Below, one piece after another: positions 9,758 through 50,845 of a stretch of DNA of 64,000 bases (positions are counted from its first letter, which is position 1; the number at the start of each line of letters is the position of its first letter). The position numbers and the translations under genes were made by a program. Source of the stretch: Scyliorhinus canicula (lineage: Eukaryota). The stretch covers positions 222,178,263 to 222,242,262 of the forward strand of contig NC_052148.1 of NCBI RefSeq assembly GCF_902713615.1. Reading direction: 5' to 3'. The notes under the pieces are model-generated. The model saw nothing but the letters and a program-made list of their open reading frames with translations. It did no database searches and was not told the origin of the DNA.

Positions 9758-9940
9758 CAGCACGGTAGCATTGTGGATAGCATAATTGCTTCACAGCTCC
9801 AAGGTCCCAGGTTCAATTCCGGCTTGGGTCACTGACTGTGCGGAGTCTGCACATCTTCCCCGTGTGTGCGTGGGTTTCCTACGGGTGCTCCGGTTTCCTC
9901 CCACAGTCCAAAGATGTGCAGGTTAGGTGGATTGGTCATG
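9758..9940 (+). mobile_element. HE1 SINE, 5' half
   Basis: tRNA head and V-domain, truncated after GGTGGATTGG. Confidence 0.85.
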
Positions 9941-10670
9941 ATATCCCACAAAATTCCTTCAGTGTTGAATCTACTGATGCATTTTGTCTGTTCATAGCAC
10001 AGTCTGCACTGTAAACTTGGGTAACTAGCTCAAGGGCTTCATATGCTTCCACTCCCAGTAGAGATTCACGTTCAGCCTCTACAATGGAAAATTGTACTGT
10101 GTGAACTCTGTTCTTCACATTTACATCAAGCTCGCATGCTCCTAGCATAGTAATTTCATTTCCTTTGCAGCCTTTAAATATTACTGCTTCATTTAACACT
10201 TGCGGTTTCATTCTCAGCTCATTTAAATCTGACAAACTGATAAGATTGGCCCTTGCTCCGAGGCATACTTCATCAACCATGTTGATTGATTTTGTTTGTT
10301 TTTTTTTTACTGGTAAAGCATTGCTTCACAAAATGATTTCTGCCTTTACATTTGGAGCATATCTTTCCAAACGCTGGACATTGTTGTGGGAAATGTCGAT
10401 TGCCGCATCACTGGCATGAAATGGAGGATTCGGTCAACCGCTTAAAATGGCTGCCGGTGCTGGGAACACGTTTTATACTCGAGTGTGTCACTACACTAAT
10501 GGCGTTGGCTGCCTCTCCTATCTTTGCGCCAAAACATTTCAGATTCAAAGTGCTAATCTGCTGTGAAGCTAGCTCGCTGGCATAACAAATTTTAACAGCA
10601 TTATCAAGCTGAAGCTCATTTTCTCTTCACAACCTCTCGCATACCTTGTCGTTACAAATCCCAAACAAGA
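9941..10670 (-). mobile_element. Gypsy gag/protease fragment
   Basis: ORF 9936-10280: LGARANLISLSD...LGACELDVNVKNRVHTVQFSIVEAERESLLGVEA (retropepsin fold). Gag-like LFGICNDKVCERL upstream. Confidence 0.75.
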
Positions 10671-11021
10671 GGGCAGCACGGTAGCATTGTGGATAGCGCA
10701 ATTGCTTCACAGCTCCAGGGTCCCAGGTTCGATTCCGGCTTGGGTCACTCTCTGTGCGGAGTCTGCATATCCTCCCCATGTGTGCGTGGGTTTCCTCCGG
10801 GTGCTCTGGTTTCCTCCCACAGTCCAAAGATGTGCAGGTTCAGTGGATTAGGTGGATTGGCCATGCTAGTGTCCAAAATTTCCCTTAGTGTTGGGTGGGG
10901 TTACTGGGTTATGGGGATAGGGTGGAGGTGTTGACCTTGGGTAGGGTGCTCTTTCCAAGAGCCGGTGCAGACTCGGTGGGCCGAATGGCCTCCTTCTGCA
11001 TTGTAAATTCTATGATTCTAT
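10671..11021 (+). mobile_element. HE1 SINE, full length
   Basis: GGGCAGCACGGTAGC head, V-domain and (TTCTATG)n tail. Confidence 0.9.
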
Positions 11022-12039: not shown

Positions 12040-12468
12040 TCAGGTATAGTTTAGGCCTATACACTCTAGAGTTCAGAATAATGAGGAAAGATCAAAATAA
12101 GGACTACAAGATAATGAAAGGTATGGATAAAGTAGACATGGAGCAGATGCTTCCTCTTGTGGGCCATTCTAGAACGAGAAGTCATAGTTTGTGGATTAAA
12201 ACTGAGATGAGGAGAAACTACTTCTCCCAACGGGTTGTGAATCTGTGGAATTCACTGCCCCAGTGTAAGGTGGATGCTGGGACAGTGAGTAAAGTTAAGG
12301 AAGAGTTAGACATATTTTTAATTGGTAATGCGTTGAAGGGTTATGAAGAGCGGGCAGGACGGTGGTGTTAAGGTTAGGATGAGGTCAGCCATGATCGGAT
12401 GGCAGAGCAGAATCAATGGGCCAAAAGGCCTAAACCTGCTCCTATATCTTATGAATTTATGAACTTAT
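12040..12468 (+). mobile_element. CR1 LINE 3' end
   Basis: LGLYTLEFR...RRNYFSQRVVNLWNSLP (CR1 ORF2 C-terminus) plus 3' UTR with a short tandem tail. Confidence 0.85.
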
Positions 12469-12732
12469 GTCTACACCTGGAAGTGGACAATCTTTGTTTC
12501 TACTGTTCCATGCCTCCACACAATTGATTGAATGCTTCATGTAATCTTACTCTCCTTCAGAGTTGATGTAAATTGTCTCATGTTTAGCCTTATGGAGCAT
12601 CACACGTTGTCATAGCTCATTTTTGTTTGTCAACCAGATCTTTTTGTGTGTTCCACTTGTCTTCATATGAACTTTCGTTTTAAAAGTCATTGAGAAACAT
12701 GCAGGAGTAAATTAAAATATAGCATGCCATAC

Positions 12733-13039
12733 CTATTTAAGTTGCAGAAAGTAACAGCAGGAAATTCAATTTGCTCAACATACTTAATAGTGACAGATGT
12801 AGATGTTGGCCAGCTGAAGTAACGAATGAAGCACTGGGTGATCTGAGAACAAACCCCGATTACACATCCAAGGACGACAACCATCCAGAAAACCCTGCGA
12901 GGTGTAGGTTTGCTTTGCAGTGCATTTCGTAATCCATGGAAAGAGGTTGATGCTGCAAACTCATGGTCAAAGTGTCGTACGTTCTCCATGGACAGCAATA
13001 TTTTTCCGAATAAAAAAGACCAAATCTTTTTTAATATGC
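12733..13039 (-). CDS. ASIC5: acid-sensing ion channel 5 (BASIC), coding exon 2
   Basis: GILKKIW...FDHEFAASTSFHGLRN...RRVFWMVVVLG (TM1)...YFSWPTSTSV...EFPAVTFCNLNR: DEG/ENaC HG gating motif, TM1 and FPAVTFCN signature, closest to ASIC5. Polypyrimidine tract plus AG at 13040-13041, GTATGG donor at 12732. 307 bp. Confidence 0.95.
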
Positions 13040-13430
13040 CTAAAAAAAATTTCAAACAAGAGGTAACAGTCATTGATTTTTTTCAACTTTGAGCGTTTTG
13101 TTGCTAAGAGTAAAGGGAAAGTTTTCAAATTTAAACCAATTGTCCAAATTGCATTGAGCTTACCTCTGGTTGCACAAATGCTGCAATTGTCTTTAATAAT
13201 GTAGGTGCAAACATTTGGAAATATATTTTTAGTCAGGTTTCTCTATCTCTGACGTCAAACCTGACCCAGACTGAGGGGATAAAAGTTTGTTGACTACCTG
13301 GTTCCTGATAAAATTAGCTTGGTTTGTCTCACTTATTATGTCAGATTTCCAGCGCCCATCATATTTTGTTTTTATTATTCTGTGATGCCAATGTAAAGAG
13401 AGCATTTCATTTCACAGCTGGCTATGTTAT

Positions 13431-13604
13431 ATGAAAATCGCTTATTATCATAAGTAGGCTTCAAATGAAGTTACTGTGAAAGGCCCCTAGTTGCCACATT
13501 CCGGCACCTGTTCGGGGAGACTGGTACGGGAATTGAACTGTGCTGCTGGCCTGCCTTGGTCTGCTTTCAAAGCCAGCGATTTAGCCCTGTGCTAAACCAG
13601 CCCC
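13431..13604 (-). mobile_element. tRNA-derived SINE (third family, GGGGCTGGTTTAGC head)
   Basis: Near-identical to copies at 18378-18558, 21627-21823 and 55300-55476. Tail GGAATGTGGCGACTAGGGGCTTTTCACAGTAACTTCATT..GACAATAAG(ATTTTC)n. Confidence 0.8.
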
Positions 13605-34980: not shown

Positions 34981-35498
34981 TTTATCTCCACCTTGGAACC
35001 ATTGCTGCAAAAAGGGGCGTGTGCGATACTTTGCTTCCTGAAGTCGATGATCTGTTCCTTAGTTTGCTGACATTGAAGGAGAGATTGTTGTCATTGCATC
35101 ATGCTACTAGGTTCTCTGTCTCCCTCCTGTACTCTGACTCATCATTGTTTGAGACTGATCCATTACGATGGTGTCATCAGCAAACTTGTAGATGGATTTG
35201 AAGCCACACAGTCGTGTGTGTGTAAAGGCTATAGTAGAGGTCTAAATACGCAGCCTTGTGGGGCCCTGCTATTGAGGGTTATTGTGGAGGAGATGTTATT
35301 GTTTATCCTTACTGATTGTGGTCTATTGGTCAGGTAGTCAAAGATCCAGTTGCAAAGGGAGGAGCCAGTTCCTAGGTTTTGGAGTTTGAATATGAGTTTG
35401 GCTGGGATTATGGTGTTGAAGGCGGAGCTGTAATCAATAAATAAGAGTCTGACGTAGGAGTCCTTCAGGGTTGAGCGTAGGGCCAGGGAGATAGCGTC

Positions 35499-36809
35499 AG
35501 AGGATGATGATTACGATGATGATAATTACGATCACTATGATTACGATGAGCAAAGTGAAGAATTAGATGATGAGCCAGAAGAGGAAGAACATGAAAGACT
35601 ATTCAGTTGGTTTGGCAGGAGTGACGAGGTGGTCACAAGTAGCATCCAATCTGCTCAGGACAATGGTAAGTGTGAAAGCTCTAACATGGCGTGTGCAAAA
35701 GCCATGAATGTGGGATTGCAAAAGCAGAGCAAACAGACGAGAGCAAATTGACTGCAAACAGACTGGTAACTGAAGAAATAATCCCCATTTTGAAGAAATT
35801 GGCTCAAGAGACATATGATGTATCGTCCCATGCCCATGGGATGGTTCCTGCAGTGAATTCCCCAATACTCGAGGCCAGTCCACCAAAAGACTTTGAGGAA
35901 GAACAGATGGATACATCTTCGTCCAGTTCTCCAACAAAAGACAAAACATGTATTGTGATATCGGATGAGGATGAGCCACCAATCAGTTCTCCAACAAGAC
36001 AAAGCATATATTTTCATGGTAGATGAGGAAGAGCCAGTAATTGAGGCTAAAACACAAAGGGAAGAAGCAACACCTAATGTTGATGACAATGATCCAGCTA
36101 AGATACTGGAACGCGAGGGTTTGCAGATCATTCCTGAAGTCGCAGACTTGCCTGCAACAGTGAAAGCATCCAAAAGTATGCCGACAGTGGATGCCTCACC
36201 AGGTGATGGGCATGCAGTGCAGTGTTCGAGCACAAGCACCATGGATCAACCAAAACTCCTCAATCCAGCAAAGGCTTCAGAATCAGCTATTGTGGCAGAA
36301 GAAACAGAATCAGCTATCACAGCAAAAGATCCAGAAGCAGTCATTGTTAACAAGGGATCCAGAAACAGCTAATGCCATGGTCGAGTCCAGTAGCAAGAAC
36401 GATGCCACTAAAGCTGAGAAGAAATGGAGAAGGAAAGAGCTGATAATTAAAGAGAAAAAGGAAGGGTAAGAGCGTCCAGGACACAGTTGGTCGACTGGGT
36501 CGCACCATTGACAGTGAAGATACAAGCAACAGCAAGAAGGCCAATATACAAGAAAATGCACAGAGACGGAGCAGAAGCATCGCTCCAAAAGGCTGAAATA
36601 GTTAGTGCAAAGACCAGCCAGAAAACCAGTCTTCTGAAAGTTGAAGCAAGGTTAAGTATCTGGCCAAGGGTCAGGAGAACAACAAGGCTATGTTGTTGTG
36701 AATATGTAATAAACTGTGCACAAGGGACATGTTTAAAATTATTATGCAGATCATGCTTTGGAAAGCATGGTTGCATTTGTAAATGTCAACACTTCCAAAG
36801 GAAGGGGGA
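35499..36809 (+). pseudogene. internal region of a second NAP1-capturing LTR element (acidic tract, conserved helix, SIM-like repeats, basic tail); 5' part lost
   Basis: [64 protein letters not shown] and KHRSKR align in order with motifs in 48430-49777. Ends in PPT AAAGGAAGGGGGA. The NAP domain itself is not present in this copy. Confidence 0.75.
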
Positions 36810-37113
36810 TGTAGTGATATGCCTGTGCACAGTAATGTTTATTGTTATTGATATGACCTCCAACCAGCAGGTGGTGATAGAGATCTACCATGTGACTCGA
36901 GGTGTCCTGCAGTCGGTAGTAAGTTGTACTAGAGGATAGTCGCACTAGAAGTAGCTCCAGGAGAATTCATGAATTCATTGATTTGTTGCCGTTTGTATCT
37001 TAGATCATTAGTTATCTTTCTACGTGTTTATTTTGTTAATAAAGTATCTTACTAATCAAAGAACTCAAAGTTCTGTGTTTATCTGTACTACGGCCACAAC
37101 ACAGAACATAACA
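36810..37113 (+). mobile_element. 3' LTR of the second element
   Basis: Follows the PPT; TGTAGTGATATGCC...CATAACA termini; AATAAA near 37038; shares ACCTCCAACCAGCAGGTGG with the LTRs at 46912 and 50526. Confidence 0.8.
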
Positions 37114-45042: not shown

Positions 45043-47109
45043 TCCATAACCGAATAATTTTAGTTAATGCCTCGAGTCTTGCTCTGTGCTAAGTTAGAGG
45101 AGTTGGTGATGAGGGGTAAGTGTGATGTGAGAGAATTTGTTGTGATGATACTCTCATTTTCAGTGGTTTCAGCCCTGCTGCCAGGAACACTGTTCCAATA
45201 ACGTCCAGTAATAATCTCCTACATGAAGATTTAGACACGCAGGTACACCGTACCACTCCTATTGTTTCATGCTGCCTTTGAATGTACGTTCCCCATTCTG
45301 CAAAAAAGAGGGAAGTGTGTTGTGAAATCTGTTGGTATGATGTTGTTATGATGAATAGCTGGTAATGCATGGAAACTGTAAAATGCAGCTATGAGGCTCT
45401 CATCAGTGTTAATGTGTGAGGGTGCTGTAATGTTTATGAATCCAGGATGAGTCCTAATTGAAATTCATGGTTGCTAGGTAATAGCTTTGAGGTGAAGTGA
45501 GCAGCGTCTGAGGCCAGCAGCGCAGTTGGTAGAATCTGACATTTGAAGATGCATTCACTGGCCTTGTAACATTCCCCTTTAAGGGGTCAAGCCCCCAGAG
45601 CGGCATGGCCAATCGGATAGCGGAGCCAGAGTGCGTGAACCCTGGGGTCAGATCTCAGTTTTCCCAGTTAGTTAGGAGTTTAGAGTCTTGGAACATGGTA
45701 GCTTTAATCTCACGCTCTGTGTATAGTGTTTTACTTTAATACACCGTTCATTTGTTAATCTATCTGGTGGTTGCCTGCCTGTCAGAACATGACATTTAAC
45801 TGCTCATGTGAGGTTATTGAACTTCTTGCAGCACTGCATCCGGTCCTTCATAATAGACTTCTAGCATGACTTCCAAAGCCATCTACTCCCACTGCCTTTT
45901 GACCTTTGGACGATCTCCTGAGGACCTGCCATGTATGATGTTTCTCCTCTTTCCTACATCCCGCAACCAAACCTCCAATGTAATGCAGAAAATCTTGCAG
46001 CTCACTCTCCCACCTTGTACCATTTTTCTTTCCCACACCAATTGACTTCCTGCTTGGCTCCCAGTACTTACGCCACAACCGCCACAAAGCACATTCACTT
46101 GAAGGGGATCAAAAGAATGCTGGAAATCTGAAATTAAACACCGAATGGGTGCGATCTACACGAATAGGAACAAAGTCTCGTAATGCGCACAATTAGCCGA
46201 GTGTTTCCTGATGCCCGGAGCTCAGGGAAACACCACACTATCGCACAGCCATCCAGGTAGATTGGGGGCCTCAGTGGAGAATGCGCAGCCAAGGCCGCAT
46301 TTAGCCCAGTTTTCTCCACTGAGGAGTTCTCCTTAGTGAAGGATGAGATTGGGACACCATTTTTAAATGGCGTCCCAATCTCTCGACATCCCCATCCCAA
46401 CTCATCAAAAAGGGAGTCCTCAGGCCCCCCTGCACCGATCCGCAGGGCCTGAAAAATGTCAGTTTGACATTGCCCCGCCAGCTGACAGTGCCAGCTGGGC
46501 ACCTTGGCAGTGTGAGGCTGGCATACAGATGGCAGTGCCAGGCTTGCAGTGTCAAGGTAGAAGGCTGACATCAACAGTGCCAGGGTGCCACCCTGCCAAG
46601 AGGGCAAGCACTTGGGTGACCCCCTCGAGTACCATTCTGTCTTTTTCCTGTTTGTGCAGACCAGCACTGAACAGCGCTTGTCCAAGAACTCCAAGCTGAG
46701 GGAGTTAGATCCCACGCCCTGGGCACATCGTGGGAATGCATATTAGAGTGAGAGTAGCCGTCTCACTCTAATATGCAGATTTCTAAAATGTGAGCGGGAT
46801 TAATATTGTGATGTCTCGCGGGATCACGTTTGATCACGCAAGGCGAGGTGAGCCGGTTAAATCCCGGAAGAGGGATCTCTCTCACACCCCCACACCAATC
46901 TCACCCCACCCTGTGGTGATATGCCTTAAGCAGTATCATAGATGGCTGGTGGTGCAACCTCCAACCAGCAGGTGGCGGTATGGACACACCAGTTTTTCAT
47001 GGATCTCATCGCAGCCAAGGACCAGAAGAGTTCGACCAAAAGAGAAGAAAACAAAATTTTAAATAAGGCTGCAGCTAGTGAGAACTCTTCGGAAACCATT
47101 AAAACAAGT

Positions 47110-47400
47110 TGGAAATCGATGGTATTCCTGAATAACGCATAACTTTGCTGCGACTTCAACCCAACCTCCTCAGTCGGTCTACTCTGCAAAAGCTGAACAG
47201 AACAGCTGAAAGTCACTGATCGGCCAGGTTGCTGGTGTACTTCGGAACAAGAACAATAAAGATCTTTGGTGCATGCGAATTTGAGCTCTTTGTGGACGAC
47301 ATGAGATACACATTACTGTTTCATATTGCAGACATGGTCATTGACTCCATCATAGGAGCAGATTCATCTGAATCCCTGAATTTAGGTCAGCGAATGTATG
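47110..47400 (+). pseudogene. degenerate retropepsin (Gypsy protease) domain
   Basis: W.SMVFLN...NLLSRSTLQKL...LLVYFGTRTIKIFGACEFELFVDDMRYTLLFHIADMVIDSIIGADSSESLNL aligns with the Gypsy protease at 9936-10280. No DTG/DSG catalytic motif visible; stop at 47217. Confidence 0.7.
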
Positions 47401-47529
47401 TCCCAGAAGATGGCTGGCCATCTGAATACCACAGCTCCCTACAAAATGTTAGAGTGTGTACAGTTGTTGAGGATTCAGAAGAAATCCAGGTGGAGGACGA
47501 CGGATCTGACGAAAAGACGGAGCAGCCAG

Positions 47530-48530
47530 CGAGCATTCCGCAATTCTGGTTAACAGTCTTCAAGAAGGTGCATGTGCTCTGTGGCATGATACAAGAGCAT
47601 GACGAACCCATATTAAAGCATCTGCAAGGTGTGAATATTAAATGGACAGAGCATGAGAAACAGTGGATCTTCACTCTTGAGTTTAAGTTCGAACCTGTTG
47701 AGTACTTTACAAATAAGGTGATCATGATTAGAGTGTGTACAGTTGGGGGCCTCACGGTAGCATGGTGGTTAGCATCAATGCTTCACAGCTCCAGGGTCCC
47801 AGGTTCGATTCCCAGCTGGGTCACTGTCTGTGTGGAGTCTGCACGTCCTCCCCGTGTGTGCGTGGGTTTCCTCCGGGTGCTCCGGTTTCCTCCCACAGTC
47901 CAAAGATGTGCGGGTTAGGTGGATTGGCTATGCTAAATTGCCCGTAGTGTAAGGTTAATGGGGGGATTGTTGGGTTACGGGTATACGGGTTACGTGGGTT
48001 TAAGTAGGGTGATCATTGCTCGGCACAACATCGAGGGCCGAAGGGCCTGTTCTGTGCTGTACTGTTCTATGTTCTATGTTCTATGAAAGTATATTGGCTG
48101 GATTCACGACCGCTTAACTCAATCTTTGGTGAACCAGAAATCATGGGGTATACTGGCTGTAAGACTGACTGGAGGGAGGGCAAAAATGTAACAGTAAAAA
48201 CAAATCAAATTAAAACGAACCTCAAAGGTTGAAGCACTTGCAGGACAGTGATGAAAATTGTACCAAATGAATCGTTCTTTAATTTCTTCAGTCCTCCTGA
48301 AGTTCCACAGCATGGAATGTTAAGCCAAAGTTCAGCGGGCGAACCCAATGCTGACTTTGAACTTGGCGGCTACTGTGTGAACACATAATTCTATGTGCAA
48401 TGTTGTATTTTACAGGAGAAATCATTGCAGGCAAGGTTGAATTTGATGATGACTACTATCAATATATGTTTGAAGATTTTGACGATGATGCAGAAAGCGA
48501 TGGCATGGAAGGTGAGATAGATGAAGACCA
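47530..48530 (+). pseudogene. NAP1L1: intronless NAP1L1-like nucleosome assembly protein domain (interrupted by HE1 at 47727-48085)
   Basis: IPQFWLTVFKKV..MIQEHDEPILKHL..FTLEFKFEPVEYFTNKVIM | KVY..PEIMGYTGCKTDWREGKNVTVKT..RTVMKIVPNESFFNFFSPPEVP..ADFELG..MLYFTGE..DDDY is collinear with the NAP1L1 core. Stop TGA at 48230, frameshift near 48373. Confidence 0.92.
47746..48085 (+). mobile_element. HE1 SINE inserted in the NAP domain
   Basis: Full head, V-domain and (TTCTATG)3 tail. The NAP frame resumes exactly at 48086. Confidence 0.92.
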
Positions 48531-48906
48531 GTATGAACTACTTGTTGATCTTTTTATCGCAGCTGCAAAGGCGGGTTCAATGAAAAGGCTCAAGAAGTGC
48601 TACTCCGATGGTTTGGACAGAATGAAGAGATGGTCATGGGGCATCCCGTCTTTGCTCCTGCGAAAAAGACCTACAAGTAGTTCATACTGGTCTTCATCTG
48701 TCACGGGGCATGCCCAGACCACGCTGAACACTGAGAAGAGCGGGAGCTTGGAGATGGTGCATTCAAAGCTGCTGATACTATGGAGGACCAGCCACTGACC
48801 AAGCTAGTAACAGAAGAAATCATCACAGTATTAGAGAAACTGGCTCCAGAGGTGCGTGGTGACTCGTTCCAGGTCTTTGAAACAATTCCTGTAGTCGATT
48901 CCCAAA

Positions 48907-49180
48907 TCATCGAGAACACTGGGGATTAGTGGGAAGGCGTTGATGAATACGATGATAGCAACTCTGATGTGGGAGAGTTTGATGATTCCAGGACTGAAAC
49001 ATTGGAGATCCTTGAGGATACTGAAGATAAATGGGAAGACATTGATGATGAATACGATGATAGCAACTCTGATGTGGGAGAGTTTGATGATTCCAGGACT
49101 GAAACATTGGAGATCCTTGAGGCTACTGAAGATAAATGGGAAGACATTGATGATGAATACGATGACAGCAACTCGGATGT
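48907..49180 (+). repeat. 105-bp in-frame tandem repeat (35-aa acidic unit, about 2.5 copies)
   Basis: GATGAATACGATGA starts at 48942, 49047 and 49152; unit GEFDDSRTETLEILEDTEDKWEDIDDEYDDSNSDV. Confidence 0.95.
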
Positions 49181-49905
49181 CAAAGTGATTGGCAACTCCG
49201 AGGGTGACCCAGGAGAGCAGCTGATGACAACCTCGCTATGCAACTCAATGGTTCACTCTTACATTCTTGAATTTGACCAAGATGACCCATCACAACCAGA
49301 GAGCATCGTAATCTCTAGTGAAGAAGAGCGATCGAGCGATGCTCCAGCGAGCTAAGAGGGGGCGGCACCTGTTGCCCCAGTTCCAACCTCCACCCATGCA
49401 CTAGAAAGTAAGGCGTTTCAACATTCATAGAGGCTGCAGAAGTGGGCGTGGTCACACAACCTAGTGATGACGCGTCGGCCCCTCAGGCTTCACCTGAAAC
49501 CCAGCAGACCTCCAAGCACAGGGTGAAGACCAGCACCAGACCAGAGGCTGCCGAACCTAAACACAAACACAAGAAACTGCGCCATTCCATTCTCAGAACA
49601 AAGAGAACTAAGAGGAGAAGACTGGAAGAGCTAGCTCATTCCACTAAAGAACCAGAAACAGAAACAAAGACAAGCAGCAAACAGCACCATGGCAGGAAGA
49701 GGAAAACAAAGCTGGTGGTGCAAGAGTGGCAATCACAGATGCATGCCTTCCAGAGACACAGAGCAAAGAGGAGATGAGGTACGAGGCCAACATGTAAACC
49801 AGTCTTCGAAGAGGCTGACAACAGCCCAAATGATCACAGAGGTGATCCCATGAGGGAGTAACAATGACATGTGTGAAAGAGACGGACACTGGCCAGGCAT
49901 ATCTT

Positions 49906-50407
49906 GGGCTAGATTCTCCAAAAATGGGGCTATGACCCTACTCAGGCATAAAAATGCTGGCGTTTCACTCTTGACTTTCCTTAAAAAAGTCAAGAGGTAT
50001 TCTCCTACCTACAAGGGACTGGCAGGGCCCCAGAGTGGTTCTCGCAGTCTGGCTGCGGATAGGGGCCCCCGCACCTCTGGTCGGGAGTCCACGCATATGC
50101 ATGGCGACGGTCTGGAGCGGCCGCGCCGAATGCAATTGCGGACTCAGCCGGCGGACCGACATCAAATATGTAGGTCACCCGAGATGCTGCGTGCCCGCGG
50201 ATCCGAGCCGCCCGATCGCTGCACCGGCCGCCCATGAGGCCCTCACCCCACCCCCCCGGTACTTGATCCCCCGTCCCCCACCAGGGCGGCCGCAGACTGA
50301 GCCCGGAGAATCGCGACAGCGGTGCTGGCTACGATTTCCGTGTAAAGATCGATTCCCGCCCCCGCGCCAAACACGATTTTGGCTTGGGGCTGCGGAGAAT
50401 CCAGCCC
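49906..50407. mobile_element. Harbinger-type MITE inserted in the 3' UTR of the NAP-LTR element
   Basis: GGGCTAGATTCTCC / GGAGAATCCAGCCC TIRs with flanks CTT/CAT. Confidence 0.8.
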
Positions 50408-50525
50408 CATGTTTATGGACACCCTGGTTAAACCTACTCACATTGTTAGACATATCATGAATGTATAAAGTTAAAAGATTAATGTTGGTTGTAAACAAAC
50501 CTTAATGTTTTCTGAGGAAGGGGGA

Positions 50526-50845
50526 TGTGTGATATGCCTGGAAGCAATATCATAGATGGCTGGTGGTGTGATCTCCAACCAGCAGGTGGTGGGCAGACAC
50601 ACCATGTGGTCTCAAAACAATGGTCATGTGACAAGGCATTCCAATATAAGTGGGGCACATCCGGCCATAAGGAGATGGGTATTAAACGTACTAGGGTGGT
50701 TCTAAAGGAGTACAAAGAAACTCCATGATAACTTGTCCTGTAACAGATCGTTATCTTACCATGTGTGATTCAATGAAGATCCTGGTTTGGACAAGTCAAG
50801 TTGTTTGGTAGATTCCTTGCTCGACATCGAACACAAAACACAACA
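50526..50845 (+). mobile_element. 3' LTR of the NAP-LTR element
   Basis: TGTGTGATATGCC...CACAACA, preceded by the PPT. Confidence 0.85.

What the first reader, a model, noticed from the sequence alone, without database searches (positions are those of the whole stretch)
46912..50845. LTR retroelement whose pol is replaced by a captured NAP1L1 histone chaperone fused to the Gypsy protease
Seen in the sequence, in order: 5' LTR fragment; retropepsin-like domain; then in the same frame (ORF 47229) a short acidic linker and an intronless NAP1 core (IPQFWLTVFK, QEHDEPILKHL, EYFTN, PEIMG.TGC..DW..GKNVT, SFFNFF.PPEVP, ADFE.G, LYFTGE); an acidic region; a basic tail; PPT; 3' LTR. No RT, RH or IN. Established knowledge: these motifs are diagnostic of vertebrate NAP1L1 (WLTVFK and QEHDE fit L1 better than L4), a normally multi-exon H2A-H2B chaperone gene. 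Inference: an LTR element captured spliced NAP1L1 mRNA and spread as a non-autonomous family. The product could chromatinise the element's cDNA, guide integration or counter host silencing. The NAP sequence has drifted far from the host protein while keeping core motifs, which looks like long selection inside the element rather than a plain processed pseudogene. I know of no description of such a family. This copy is dead (SINE insertion, TGA at 48230 where NAP1L1 has the Arg of KGRG, frameshifts).
Basis: partly seen in the sequence, partly recalled or inferred. Interest (0 to 1): 0.92.

Follow-up and report, generated by a model that had tools for sequence, protein, structure and literature searches.

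The report
Retrotransposon family carrying captured NAP1L1 chaperone
This is a dead copy of a catshark jumping-gene family that replaced its copying enzymes with part of the host histone chaperone NAP1L1, spread across chromosomes with outside help, and kept the stolen domain under selection while it was active.

Summary
Window 46912-50845 reads: stub of a 5' LTR, gag-PR linker, retropepsin remnant, intronless NAP core in the same frame, an acidic-then-basic region X with no known relative, PPT, and a 320-nt 3' LTR. There is no RT, RNase H or integrase. A SINE, one stop, one frameshift and an inverted duplication break this copy.

It belongs to a family. I found the same LTR-PBS-Gag-PR-NAP-X-PPT-LTR plan at seven further loci on seven chromosomes of Scyliorhinus canicula and S. 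torazame. A second, truncated copy lies at 35500-37113 of this window. All copies share one PR|NAP junction. All element NAPs form one clade (100/100) nested inside shark NAP1L1, so there was a single capture of spliced mRNA.

The NAP cargo was probably constrained. On the branch between the two subfamilies dN/dS is 0.13-0.20. On terminal branches it is 0.45-0.69, close to or below the neutral value of this estimator (0.65-0.8). No stop or frameshift is shared between copies.

All eight copies examined are broken, and LTR pairs differ by 9-19%.

The scan found this family before on other DNA of this genome: six notes, one followed up. That follow-up called the cargo a freely decaying passenger. 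My branch-split analysis contradicts it.

The mechanism class, LTR-mediated retroposition, is known. This long-lived, selected, in-frame chaperone cargo is a new variant.

The parts
46912..46991 (+). Stub of the 5' LTR: the first ~80 nt of U3, beginning TGTGGTGATATGCC
   Evidence: 86-88% identical to the start of the 3' LTR. 96% identical to the LTR start of sister copy L007. The rest of the LTR, the PBS and Gag are missing.
46992..47108 (+). Remnant of the Gag-PR linker (FFMDLI...)
   Evidence: Translation resembles the FFVDQIS / FFVDLIL stretch between the zinc knuckle and the protease in L001 and L004. Judged by eye.
47109..47405 (+). Retropepsin (aspartic protease) remnant with two in-frame stops and a degraded active-site region
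   Evidence: tblastn to the family protease gives E 7e-8. Same frame as NAP. The family protease passes Pfam Asp_protease_2. Atlas neighbours are RVP / gag-asp_proteas clusters.
47406..47726 (+). PR|NAP junction and the first part of the captured NAP1L1 core (host residues ~131-228)
   Evidence: Pfam NAP E 1.4e-23. The junction is shared by all copies.
47727..48085 (+). SINE insertion of 359 nt, private to this copy
   Evidence: Fourteen other copies in the window at 73-90%. Absent from sister copy L007. Removal restores the frame.
48086..48455 (+). Rest of the NAP core and start of the acidic tail. TGA at 48230-48232 and a frameshift near 48385-48400.
   Evidence: Pfam NAP model 161-248. Lesion map.
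48456..49860 (+). Region X: an acidic stretch followed by a basic tail, conserved in the family but with no known relative. Holds a private 58-nt inverted duplication (48645-48702) and a 105-nt tandem duplication (48941-49150).
   Evidence: Collinear with X of L003, L004, L006, L007 and window copy 2. No Pfam hit, no homologue, and no match to the host 3' flank.
49906..50407 (.). MITE-like insert with 14-nt terminal inverted repeats, shared with sister copy L007
   Evidence: The TIRs can be read. L007 has an insert with the same ends at the same site and L006 has none.
50514..50525 (+). Polypurine tract
   Evidence: GAGGAAGGGGGA lies directly before the LTR. The same motif is present in all copies.
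50526..50845 (+). 3' LTR (TGTG...AACA)
   Evidence: 79-81% identical over 369-476 nt to the 3' LTR of L007. Its end matches the LTR ends that abut the PBS in L001, L003, L004 and L006.
35500..37113 (+). Second family copy of the other subfamily: region X, PPT and 3' LTR. The 5' part is cut off next to a LINE tail.
   Evidence: Collinear matches. X is 60-65% identical in amino acids to L003 and L004. The LTR is 75-78% identical to those of L001 and L003.
9936..10680 (-). Gag / zinc-knuckle / protease fragment of a related element that continues into a pol-like sequence instead of NAP. It is a candidate relative of the autonomous helper.
   Evidence: tblastn 53-69% to family Gag, ZnK and PR. After the protease its ORF reads ...LELVTQVYSADCA...LKEF. 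It is cut by a SINE.

Best explanation
The feature is a dead member of a non-autonomous LTR retrotransposon family of catsharks (Scyliorhinus).

Origin (inferred). The family's founder arose once. During reverse transcription of a Ty3/Gypsy-like element, the pol region after the protease was replaced by a piece of spliced host NAP1L1 mRNA covering residues ~131-378. That piece is the histone-binding 'earmuff' domain plus the acidic tail. It lacks the N-terminal dimerisation helix. The result was a single Gag-PR-NAP-X reading frame between intact LTRs, PBS and PPT.

Spread (copies shown, helper inferred). With no RT, RNase H or integrase, the chimera must have been copied by the enzymes of autonomous relatives. 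It spread to many chromosomes and split into at least two subfamilies.

Selection (shown, within stated caveats). While the family was active, the NAP coding sequence was kept open and under purifying selection, about as strongly as Gag. After insertion each copy decays neutrally.

What NAP-X did for the element (inferred only). The most likely role is as the Pol-position tail of the Gag polyprotein. In that position it would be packaged into particles, where it could bind histones and/or carry the complex into the nucleus or onto chromatin.

The window copy. It has only a U3 stub at its 5' end and no Gag. It may have been defective on arrival.
For: Family and architecture
- tblastn with Gag, ZnK, PR, NAP and X probes finds the same order in L001-L007.
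- Each copy has its own LTRs, and three have full pairs (K2P 0.145-0.19).
- PBS TGGTACCA follows the 5' LTR and PPT AAAGGAAGGGGGA precedes the 3' LTR. L007 has a perfect 5-bp TSD, AGGAG.
- The loci lie on seven chromosomes of two species.
- A copy's two LTRs are more alike (83-87%) than the LTRs of different copies (66-83%). This is the signature of retrotransposition rather than DNA duplication.

Single capture
- All copies have the same junction: ...LNLVEwLYiPDSa | (p)TE(d)hC(d)WQGD.
- It lies ~10 codons inside the host exon that begins at R121.
- The ten element NAPs form one clade (100/100) nested in chondrichthyan and shark NAP1L1, not NAP1L4.
- The closest host proteins are shark NAP1L1 at 72-74%.

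Intronless
- The host gene in Chiloscyllium has this segment in at least seven exons spread over ~40 kb. The element ORFs are continuous.
- The L004 ORF aligns to solved human NAP1L1 residues 141-378 of 391 (E 1e-91).

Selection on NAP
- Between-subfamily dN/dS is 0.26-0.47. Within subfamilies it is 0.63-0.81.
- The neutral expectation of the same estimator is 0.65-0.8.
- A four-point branch split gives internal dN 0.04-0.07 and dS 0.28-0.44, so omega is 0.13-0.20 (CI 0.06-0.41). Terminal omega is 0.45-0.69. Bootstrap P(internal >= terminal) is 0.000-0.067.
- None of the stops or frameshifts is shared between copies. There are 0-2 stops per copy, against 4.6-6.3 expected under free decay over the subfamily distance.
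- Element substitutions avoid host-invariant columns: 27% versus 46% of copies changed, p = 3e-5.
- NAP runs in frame into X in L002, L004 and P0269.
Against: - L001-L007 were found through annotated ORFs. That favours copies with open NAP frames. It inflates the 'few stops' argument, though not the internal-branch omega.
- Only eight DNA copies were compared. NG86 and four-point distances are crude, dS is near saturation for some pairs, and quartets that include the window copy have wider intervals (upper bounds 0.41-0.58).
- Selection could act mainly to keep the frame open for X, with less constraint on NAP chemistry.
- No expression evidence. RNA runs hold almost none of this copy's words, and the read-laying run was lost.
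- Ty3/Gypsy membership is not shown, because there is no RT or IN to classify.
- The window copy has no clean TSD (CACCC versus CCACG).
- No intact copy was seen, so current activity is unlikely.
- An earlier follow-up in this scan (s1-195920) read the cargo as a free passenger.
Confidence: 0.85

Rival explanations
1. The family is real, but NAP is a functionless passenger. It was carried along because it happened to sit between the cis-acting ends, and it decays freely. This is the reading of the earlier follow-up, s1-195920.
For: Close pairs give dN/dS of 0.63-0.81, indistinguishable from neutral for this estimator. Every copy seen is broken. The piece lacks the dimerisation helix that NAP1 proteins are described as using to dimerise. 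I found no expression signal.
Against: Internal-branch omega is 0.13-0.20, with confidence intervals below the terminal and neutral values. No lesions are shared, and there are too few stops for free decay over dS 0.6-1.0. Substitutions spare host-invariant sites (p = 3e-5). Gag, which must be functional, shows the same pattern.
Confidence: 0.2
2. An ordinary L1-type processed pseudogene of NAP1L1 happened to land inside one LTR element.
For: The segment is intronless. NAP1L retrocopies are common in mammals (my own knowledge; several mammalian NAP1L1-like fragments appear).
Against: There is no poly(A) tail and no TSD of its own. The segment is truncated at both ends and in frame with PR and X. 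The same junction is present in at least eight copies on different chromosomes, each with its own LTR pair.
Confidence: 0.01
3. The copies arose by segmental (DNA-level) duplication of one chimeric locus, not by retrotransposition.
For: In L001 the copy lies between two 1189-nt direct repeats that are 98.6% alike, so some DNA-level rearrangement occurs around these copies.
Against: Flanks are unrelated between loci: blastn of the window element finds only the NAP region in L001-L003. Copies end exactly at LTR termini. Within-copy LTR identity exceeds between-copy identity. L007 has a perfect TSD. The copies lie on seven different chromosomes.
Confidence: 0.03
4. These are members of a host gene family, a domesticated Gag-PR-NAP gene, as the Gnomon names ('nucleosome assembly protein 1-like 1') suggest.
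For: NCBI annotates nine of them as proteins. There is purifying selection on internal branches.
Against: All examined copies have stops or frameshifts somewhere in Gag-PR-NAP-X. They carry LTR, PBS and PPT. Terminal branches evolve neutrally. The annotated models are fragments of 113-443 aa that begin inside the element.
Confidence: 0.03

Closest known systems
LTR-mediated retrocopies (Tan et al. 2016, Genome Res, PMC5131818)
   Same: Part of the internal ORF of an LTR retrotransposon is replaced by a spliced host mRNA fragment through template switching. The chimera is flanked by LTRs with no poly(A) tail. The authors note that such loci may act as non-autonomous elements and be copied again.
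   Different: Those cases are young, single or few-copy, and mostly unselected. Here the chimera is fused in frame to Gag-PR, has diversified into subfamilies in two species, and its cargo shows purifying selection on the internal branch. Microsimilarity at the switch points cannot be read any more.
Acutely transforming retroviruses (Gag-onc fusions; my own knowledge)
   Same: They are replication-defective. Pol is replaced by a spliced host cDNA fused to Gag. They depend on a helper and arise from one capture event.
   Different: This is a germ-line retrotransposon family that persisted for a long time. The cargo is a histone chaperone fragment, not a growth-control gene. No env and no infectious phase are implied.
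Maize Bs1 and rice LTR elements with captured gene fragments (cited in PMC5131818)
   Same: An LTR element whose pol was replaced by host gene fragments and which is non-autonomous.
   Different: Those are plant elements, with very low copy number for Bs1. Evidence that the cargo served the element is lacking.
Chromoviruses: Ty3/Gypsy elements with a chromodomain on integrase (my own knowledge)
   Same: A Gypsy-type element acquired a host chromatin-binding module and kept it under selection.
   Different: There the module sits on a working integrase in an autonomous element and has been shown to direct targeting. Here the module replaces pol altogether and its role is unknown.
Host NAP1L1 (solved structures 7UN3 and 11BC; shark proteins P0270, P0271)
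   Same: 72-74% identity to shark NAP1L1 over residues ~141-378. Full Pfam NAP positions 68-266 and the acidic tail are present.
   Different: It lacks the first ~130 residues, including Pfam model positions 1-67 (the long dimerisation helix, by my knowledge of Nap1 structures). It is intronless and evolves far faster than the host gene (stem 0.25 and tips 0.2-1.0 versus 0-0.1 substitutions per site).

Membership tests
LTR retrotransposon | Two direct long terminal repeats ending TG...CA | tested here: met
   Window: a U3 stub at 46912-46991 plus a full 3' LTR at 50526-50845 (TGTG...AACA). Full pairs in L003, L004 and L006 with K2P 0.145-0.19.
LTR retrotransposon | PBS after the 5' LTR and PPT before the 3' LTR | tested here: met
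   The PPT is present in the window copy and in all others. The PBS (TGGTACCA) is present in L001, L003, L004 and L006 but deleted in the window copy. The primer tRNA was not identified.
LTR retrotransposon | Target-site duplication | tested here: inconclusive
   L007 has a perfect 5-bp AGGAG. The window copy has CACCC versus CCACG, and L004 has CGTGG versus GATGG.
Ty3/Gypsy superfamily | pol order PR-RT-RH-IN and RT phylogeny | not testable with these tools
   The family has no RT, RH or IN. Only Gag (weak Atlas lead to Retrotrans_gag / zf-CCHC) and a retropepsin (Pfam Asp_protease_2 E 3e-5) remain. The related fragment at window 9936-10680 is cut before RT.
NAP family (PF00956) | Match to the Pfam NAP model above the gathering score | tested here: met
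   Window piece scores 83.9 bits against a cutoff of 28.6. The L004 ORF scores 215.8 bits, model positions 68-266 of 266.
NAP family (PF00956) | N-terminal long helix that makes the NAP dimer | tested here: not met
   No copy matches model positions 1-62. Alignment to solved NAP1L1 starts at residue 141. Upstream sequence is protease, not NAP.
NAP1L1 orthology group (versus NAP1L4) | Placement in a NAP1L1 / NAP1L4 tree | tested here: met
   The element clade lies inside chondrichthyan NAP1L1 (100/99), next to the shark sequences (98/93, 99/88). NAP1L4 forms a separate clade.
L1-type processed pseudogene | Poly(A) tail and its own TSD around the retrocopy | tested here: not met
   NAP runs in frame from PR into X with no A-run or flanking repeat.
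LTR-mediated retrocopy (Tan et al. 2016) | Spliced host mRNA fragment replacing internal ORF sequence between LTR parts | tested here: met
   Host residues ~131-378 are encoded by at least seven exons over ~40 kb in Chiloscyllium. In the element they are continuous and sit where RT should begin.
LTR-mediated retrocopy (Tan et al. 2016) | Microsimilarity at the switch points | not testable with these tools
   The copies are 20-30% diverged, and neither the parental element nor the Scyliorhinus host mRNA is at hand.

The most novel reading that the evidence does not exclude
The NAP-X module was working cargo. It would be a retrotransposon-encoded, monomeric histone-chaperone fragment delivered in the Pol position of the Gag polyprotein. 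Its job would be to tether or import the helper-made cDNA complex to chromatin, or to load histones on the cDNA. That would give a helper-dependent element an edge over its autonomous relatives for tens of millions of years. It would be the first vertebrate LTR element family shown to have adopted a host histone chaperone.
Probability: 0.3. Interest if true: 0.85.

Novelty: new variant of a known kind. Interest (0 to 1): 0.72.

Why it matters
Gene capture by LTR elements is known, but usually as young, single, decaying chimeras. Here a captured host chromatin protein was fused in frame to Gag-PR. It was then amplified, diversified and, by the branch-split dN/dS, kept under selection by the element itself.

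This makes one question testable with natural sequences: what can a histone-chaperone domain do for a retroelement? It parallels the chromodomain of chromoviruses. It also bears on reported links between host NAP1-type chaperones and retroviruses (my own knowledge, not checked here).

There is a practical point too. NCBI annotates at least nine of these copies in two catshark genomes as 'nucleosome assembly protein 1-like 1'. They are transposon fragments and inflate the apparent NAP1L gene count.

Tried and rejected
I therefore have no read depth, no orthology check and no expression data from reads.
- The look-up of sequencing runs shows near-identical words only in two organisms. RNA runs hold 0-7% of the words. 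That is too weak to claim transcription.
- The share of 0.08 in organism B hints at an orthologous copy at roughly 7% divergence. This is an inference from word arithmetic and was not checked.
- Region X gave nothing: no Pfam hit, no homologue among 1961 candidates, no Atlas hit, and no similarity to 6 kb of 3' flank of the host NAP1L1 gene apart from unrelated repeats. Its origin is unknown.
- The AlphaFold2 model of the L004 NAP-X ORF with a 24-row alignment had mean pLDDT 50.7. That is too poor for fold searches, so I made none.
- I considered splice-mediated capture, meaning read-through into a host exon. I rejected it because the junction lies ~10 codons inside the exon, not at its boundary.
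- I ran no complex prediction.
- Seven literature searches found no description of NAP in any LTR element. Repbase and Dfam could not be consulted.

Full report
**Observation**

The region reads as the first-stage reader described it.
- An LTR start (TGTGGTGATATGCC...) at 46912-46991 matches the start of a 320-nt LTR at 50526-50845 at 86-88%.
- The 3' LTR is preceded by a polypurine tract.
- After the 5' stub come a short Gag-PR linker remnant and a retropepsin remnant at 47109-47405 (tblastn E 7e-8 to the family protease).
- In the same frame follows a NAP domain. Pfam PF00956 hits it in three pieces: E 1.4e-23, 5e-6 and 6e-6, covering model positions 63-248 of 266.
- A 359-nt SINE at 47727-48085 splits the NAP. 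It has 14 other copies in the window, and its removal restores the frame.
- A TGA at 48230 replaces the Arg of KGRG, and there is one frameshift near 48385-48400.
- Downstream lies a 1.4-kb acidic-then-basic region, which I call X, then a MITE-like insert with inverted ends (49906-50407).
- There is no RT, RNase H or integrase.

**It is a family, not a one-off**

A phmmer search of the PR-NAP piece against 1.8 billion representative proteins gave short proteins of Scyliorhinus canicula and S. torazame as best hits. They are 49-59% identical, are named 'NAP1L1' by NCBI, and lie on different chromosomes.

I fetched seven of these loci. Probes for Gag, zinc knuckle, protease, NAP and X find the same order in them. 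The plan is:

LTR (~300 nt, TGTG...AACA) - PBS (TGGTACCA) - Gag - CCHC knuckle - retropepsin - NAP - X - PPT (AAAGGAAGGGGGA) - LTR.

Further support:
- The L002 protease passes Pfam Asp_protease_2 and carries LDTGA.
- Three copies have both LTRs, with K2P 0.145-0.19.
- A copy's own LTRs are more alike than LTRs of different copies.
- L007 has a perfect 5-bp target duplication.
- A second, 5'-truncated copy of the other subfamily lies at 35500-37113 of this window. This confirms note s1-243539.
- At 9936-10680 (minus strand) there is a related Gag-knuckle-protease fragment that runs on into pol-like sequence instead of NAP. This is what a relative of the helper should look like.

The scan's notebook lists six more windows of this genome with the same kind of copy. 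I could not inspect those.

**One capture of spliced NAP1L1 mRNA**

All copies share one junction. Element sequence ...LNLVEwLYiPDSa is followed by (p)TE(d)hC(d)WQGD...LSDEI.AKVKVEED...GIPeFWLT. This matches shark NAP1L1 ...FEPTEEECKWQGDDEEELSDEMKEKVKVEEE...GIPEFWLT.

In the Chiloscyllium host gene the junction point lies about ten codons inside the exon that starts at R121. The captured residues ~131-378 are spread over at least seven exons and about 40 kb. In the element they are continuous. For example, L004 has a 295-codon ORF running from NAP into X. That ORF aligns to solved human NAP1L1 residues 141-378 of 391 (E 1e-91).

The junction inside an exon argues for a template switch during reverse transcription rather than splicing of a read-through transcript.

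In a maximum-likelihood tree:
- the ten element NAPs form one clade (100/100);
- that clade is nested in chondrichthyan NAP1L1 (100/99) and next to the shark sequences (98/93, 99/88);
- NAP1L4 is separate.

The closest host proteins in a 5.8-billion-protein search are shark NAP1L1 at 72-74%.

The captured piece lacks Pfam model positions 1-62. By my knowledge of Nap1 structures this is the long dimerisation helix. It keeps the alpha/beta 'earmuff' domain and the acidic tail.

**Was the cargo selected?**

Pairwise NG86 estimates on about 200 aligned codons give dN/dS of 0.63-0.81 for close pairs. Pairs from the two subfamilies give 0.26-0.47. Subfamily A is L001-L004 and subfamily B is the window copy plus L005-L007.

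I calibrated the estimator by evolving a real family sequence neutrally, with the transition bias measured in the LTR pairs (kappa about 3.5). It returns 0.65-0.8, with 2.5% bounds of 0.38-0.6. Close pairs therefore look neutral and distant pairs do not.

I then split the distances by the four-point rule.

| Branch | dN | dS | omega |
|---|---|---|---|
| Internal (between subfamilies) | 0.04-0.07 | 0.28-0.44 | 0.13-0.20 (bootstrap intervals 0.06-0.41) |
| Four terminal branches | - | - | 0.45-0.69 |

The bootstrap probability that the internal omega reaches the terminal one is 0.000-0.067. Only replicating elements can have travelled the internal branch.

Independent lines agree:
- No stop or frameshift is shared between any two copies.
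- Copies carry 0-2 stops, where free decay over the subfamily distance predicts 4.6-6.3.
- Substitutions in the element avoid columns that are invariant among host NAP1 proteins: 27% against 46% of copies changed, p = 3e-5.
- Gag, which must work, shows the same pattern.
- The post-insertion decay inferred from dN and dS of the closest pair, about 0.08 per copy, fits half the LTR divergence.

Caveats:
- The seven loci were found through annotated ORFs, which favours open frames.
- The methods are distance-based.
- Part of the constraint may simply keep the frame open for X.

X itself is conserved in layout and in several short motifs, and ends in a strongly basic tail. Its distant-pair dN/dS is 0.4-0.76. 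It has no detectable relative.

An earlier follow-up in this scan (s1-195920) concluded that the cargo decays freely. That is true of each inserted copy. It does not hold for the branch between subfamilies.

**State and age**

All eight copies examined have stops or frame changes somewhere in Gag-PR-NAP-X. LTR pairs differ by 9-19%.

These are therefore old insertions. With an assumed, uncalibrated neutral rate of 1-2 x 10^-9 per site per year they would be tens of millions of years old.

The window copy and L007 are sisters, 77-81% identical over their whole length. They share the MITE-like insert at the same site, which L006 lacks. That insert was therefore carried along in retrotransposition.

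Both sisters have only a stub of the 5' LTR (80 and 50 nt), joined to different internal points, and L007 has an intact target duplication. This suggests, as inference only, that they were defective products of an aberrant plus-strand transfer and never had Gag at these loci.

**How it most likely works**

Shown:
- the architecture;
- the multi-copy family;
- the single capture from NAP1L1;
- the absence of the enzymes;
- constraint on the cargo in active lineages.

Inferred:
- The founder arose by template switching onto a co-packaged NAP1L1 mRNA, the mechanism described as LTR-mediated retroposition (PMC5131818).
- Copies were mobilised in trans by autonomous relatives.
- NAP-X occupies the Pol position of a Gag-PR-NAP-X polyprotein, so it would be packaged into particles.
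- There, a monomeric histone-binding domain with an acidic tail and a basic, NLS-like end could help nuclear entry, chromatin tethering or histone loading of the cDNA.

None of these functions has been tested.

**Comparison and novelty**

The kind is known: LTR-mediated retrocopies, Gag-onc viruses, maize Bs1. Acquisition of a chromatin module by Gypsy elements is known from chromoviruses.

What I found described nowhere is a long-lived, diversified vertebrate family whose in-frame cargo is a histone chaperone fragment kept under selection. Repbase and Dfam could not be checked. I rate it a new variant of a known kind.

**What failed**

RNA word shares are negligible. The structure model was too poor to use.

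Noticed in passing
window 35500-37113: Second copy of the family, from the other subfamily. It has region X, PPT and a full 3' LTR ending at 37113. Its 5' part (Gag-PR-NAP) is missing, and the remaining element sequence begins about 500 nt after a LINE tail that ends near 34985.
   Followed up: yes
window 9936-10680 (-): Gag / CCHC knuckle / protease fragment 53-69% identical to the family's. It continues past the protease into pol-like sequence (…LKEF) instead of NAP and is cut by a SINE at 9761-9943. It is a possible relative of the autonomous helper.
   Followed up: partly
window 47448-47465 and 47729-47746: The 18-nt string TTAGAGTGTGTACAGTTG, native to the PR|NAP linker, recurs exactly at the 5' junction of the SINE insert 281 nt downstream. 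It looks as if a short templated patch was copied in when the SINE inserted.
   Followed up: no
window 48645-48702 (with 48516-48573): A 58-nt inverted duplication inside region X that forms a 187-nt palindrome. In sister copy L007 the segment occurs once, in forward orientation, so this is a private rearrangement.
   Followed up: partly
window 49906-50407; L007:11822-12441: A MITE-like insert with 14-nt terminal inverted repeats sits at the same site in the window copy and in L007 but not in L006. A DNA transposon nested in the master element was therefore propagated by retrotransposition.
   Followed up: partly
window 46912-46991; L007:9701-9750: Two sister copies each have only a stub of U3 (80 and 50 nt) joined to different internal points. 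L007 nevertheless has a perfect 5-bp TSD (AGGAG). This may be the signature of aberrant plus-strand strong-stop transfer giving copies that were defective on arrival.
   Followed up: partly
L001:6867-8055 and 12370-13556: In S. torazame the NAP-element copy lies between two 1189-nt direct repeats that are 98.6% identical and 5.5 kb apart. It may have become the inside of a younger composite LTR-like unit.
   Followed up: no
window 48941-49150: Two 105-nt tandem units in the acidic part of X are 99% identical, with a third degenerate unit following. L007 also has repeated units here, so the array is ancestral, but in this copy it was recently duplicated or homogenised.
   Followed up: no
NCBI annotation of S. 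canicula and S. torazame (P0001-P0004, P0006, P0007, P0033, P0156, P0269): At least nine Gnomon proteins named 'nucleosome assembly protein 1-like 1' or 'uncharacterized' are fragments of this transposon family, not host NAP1L genes.
   Followed up: yes
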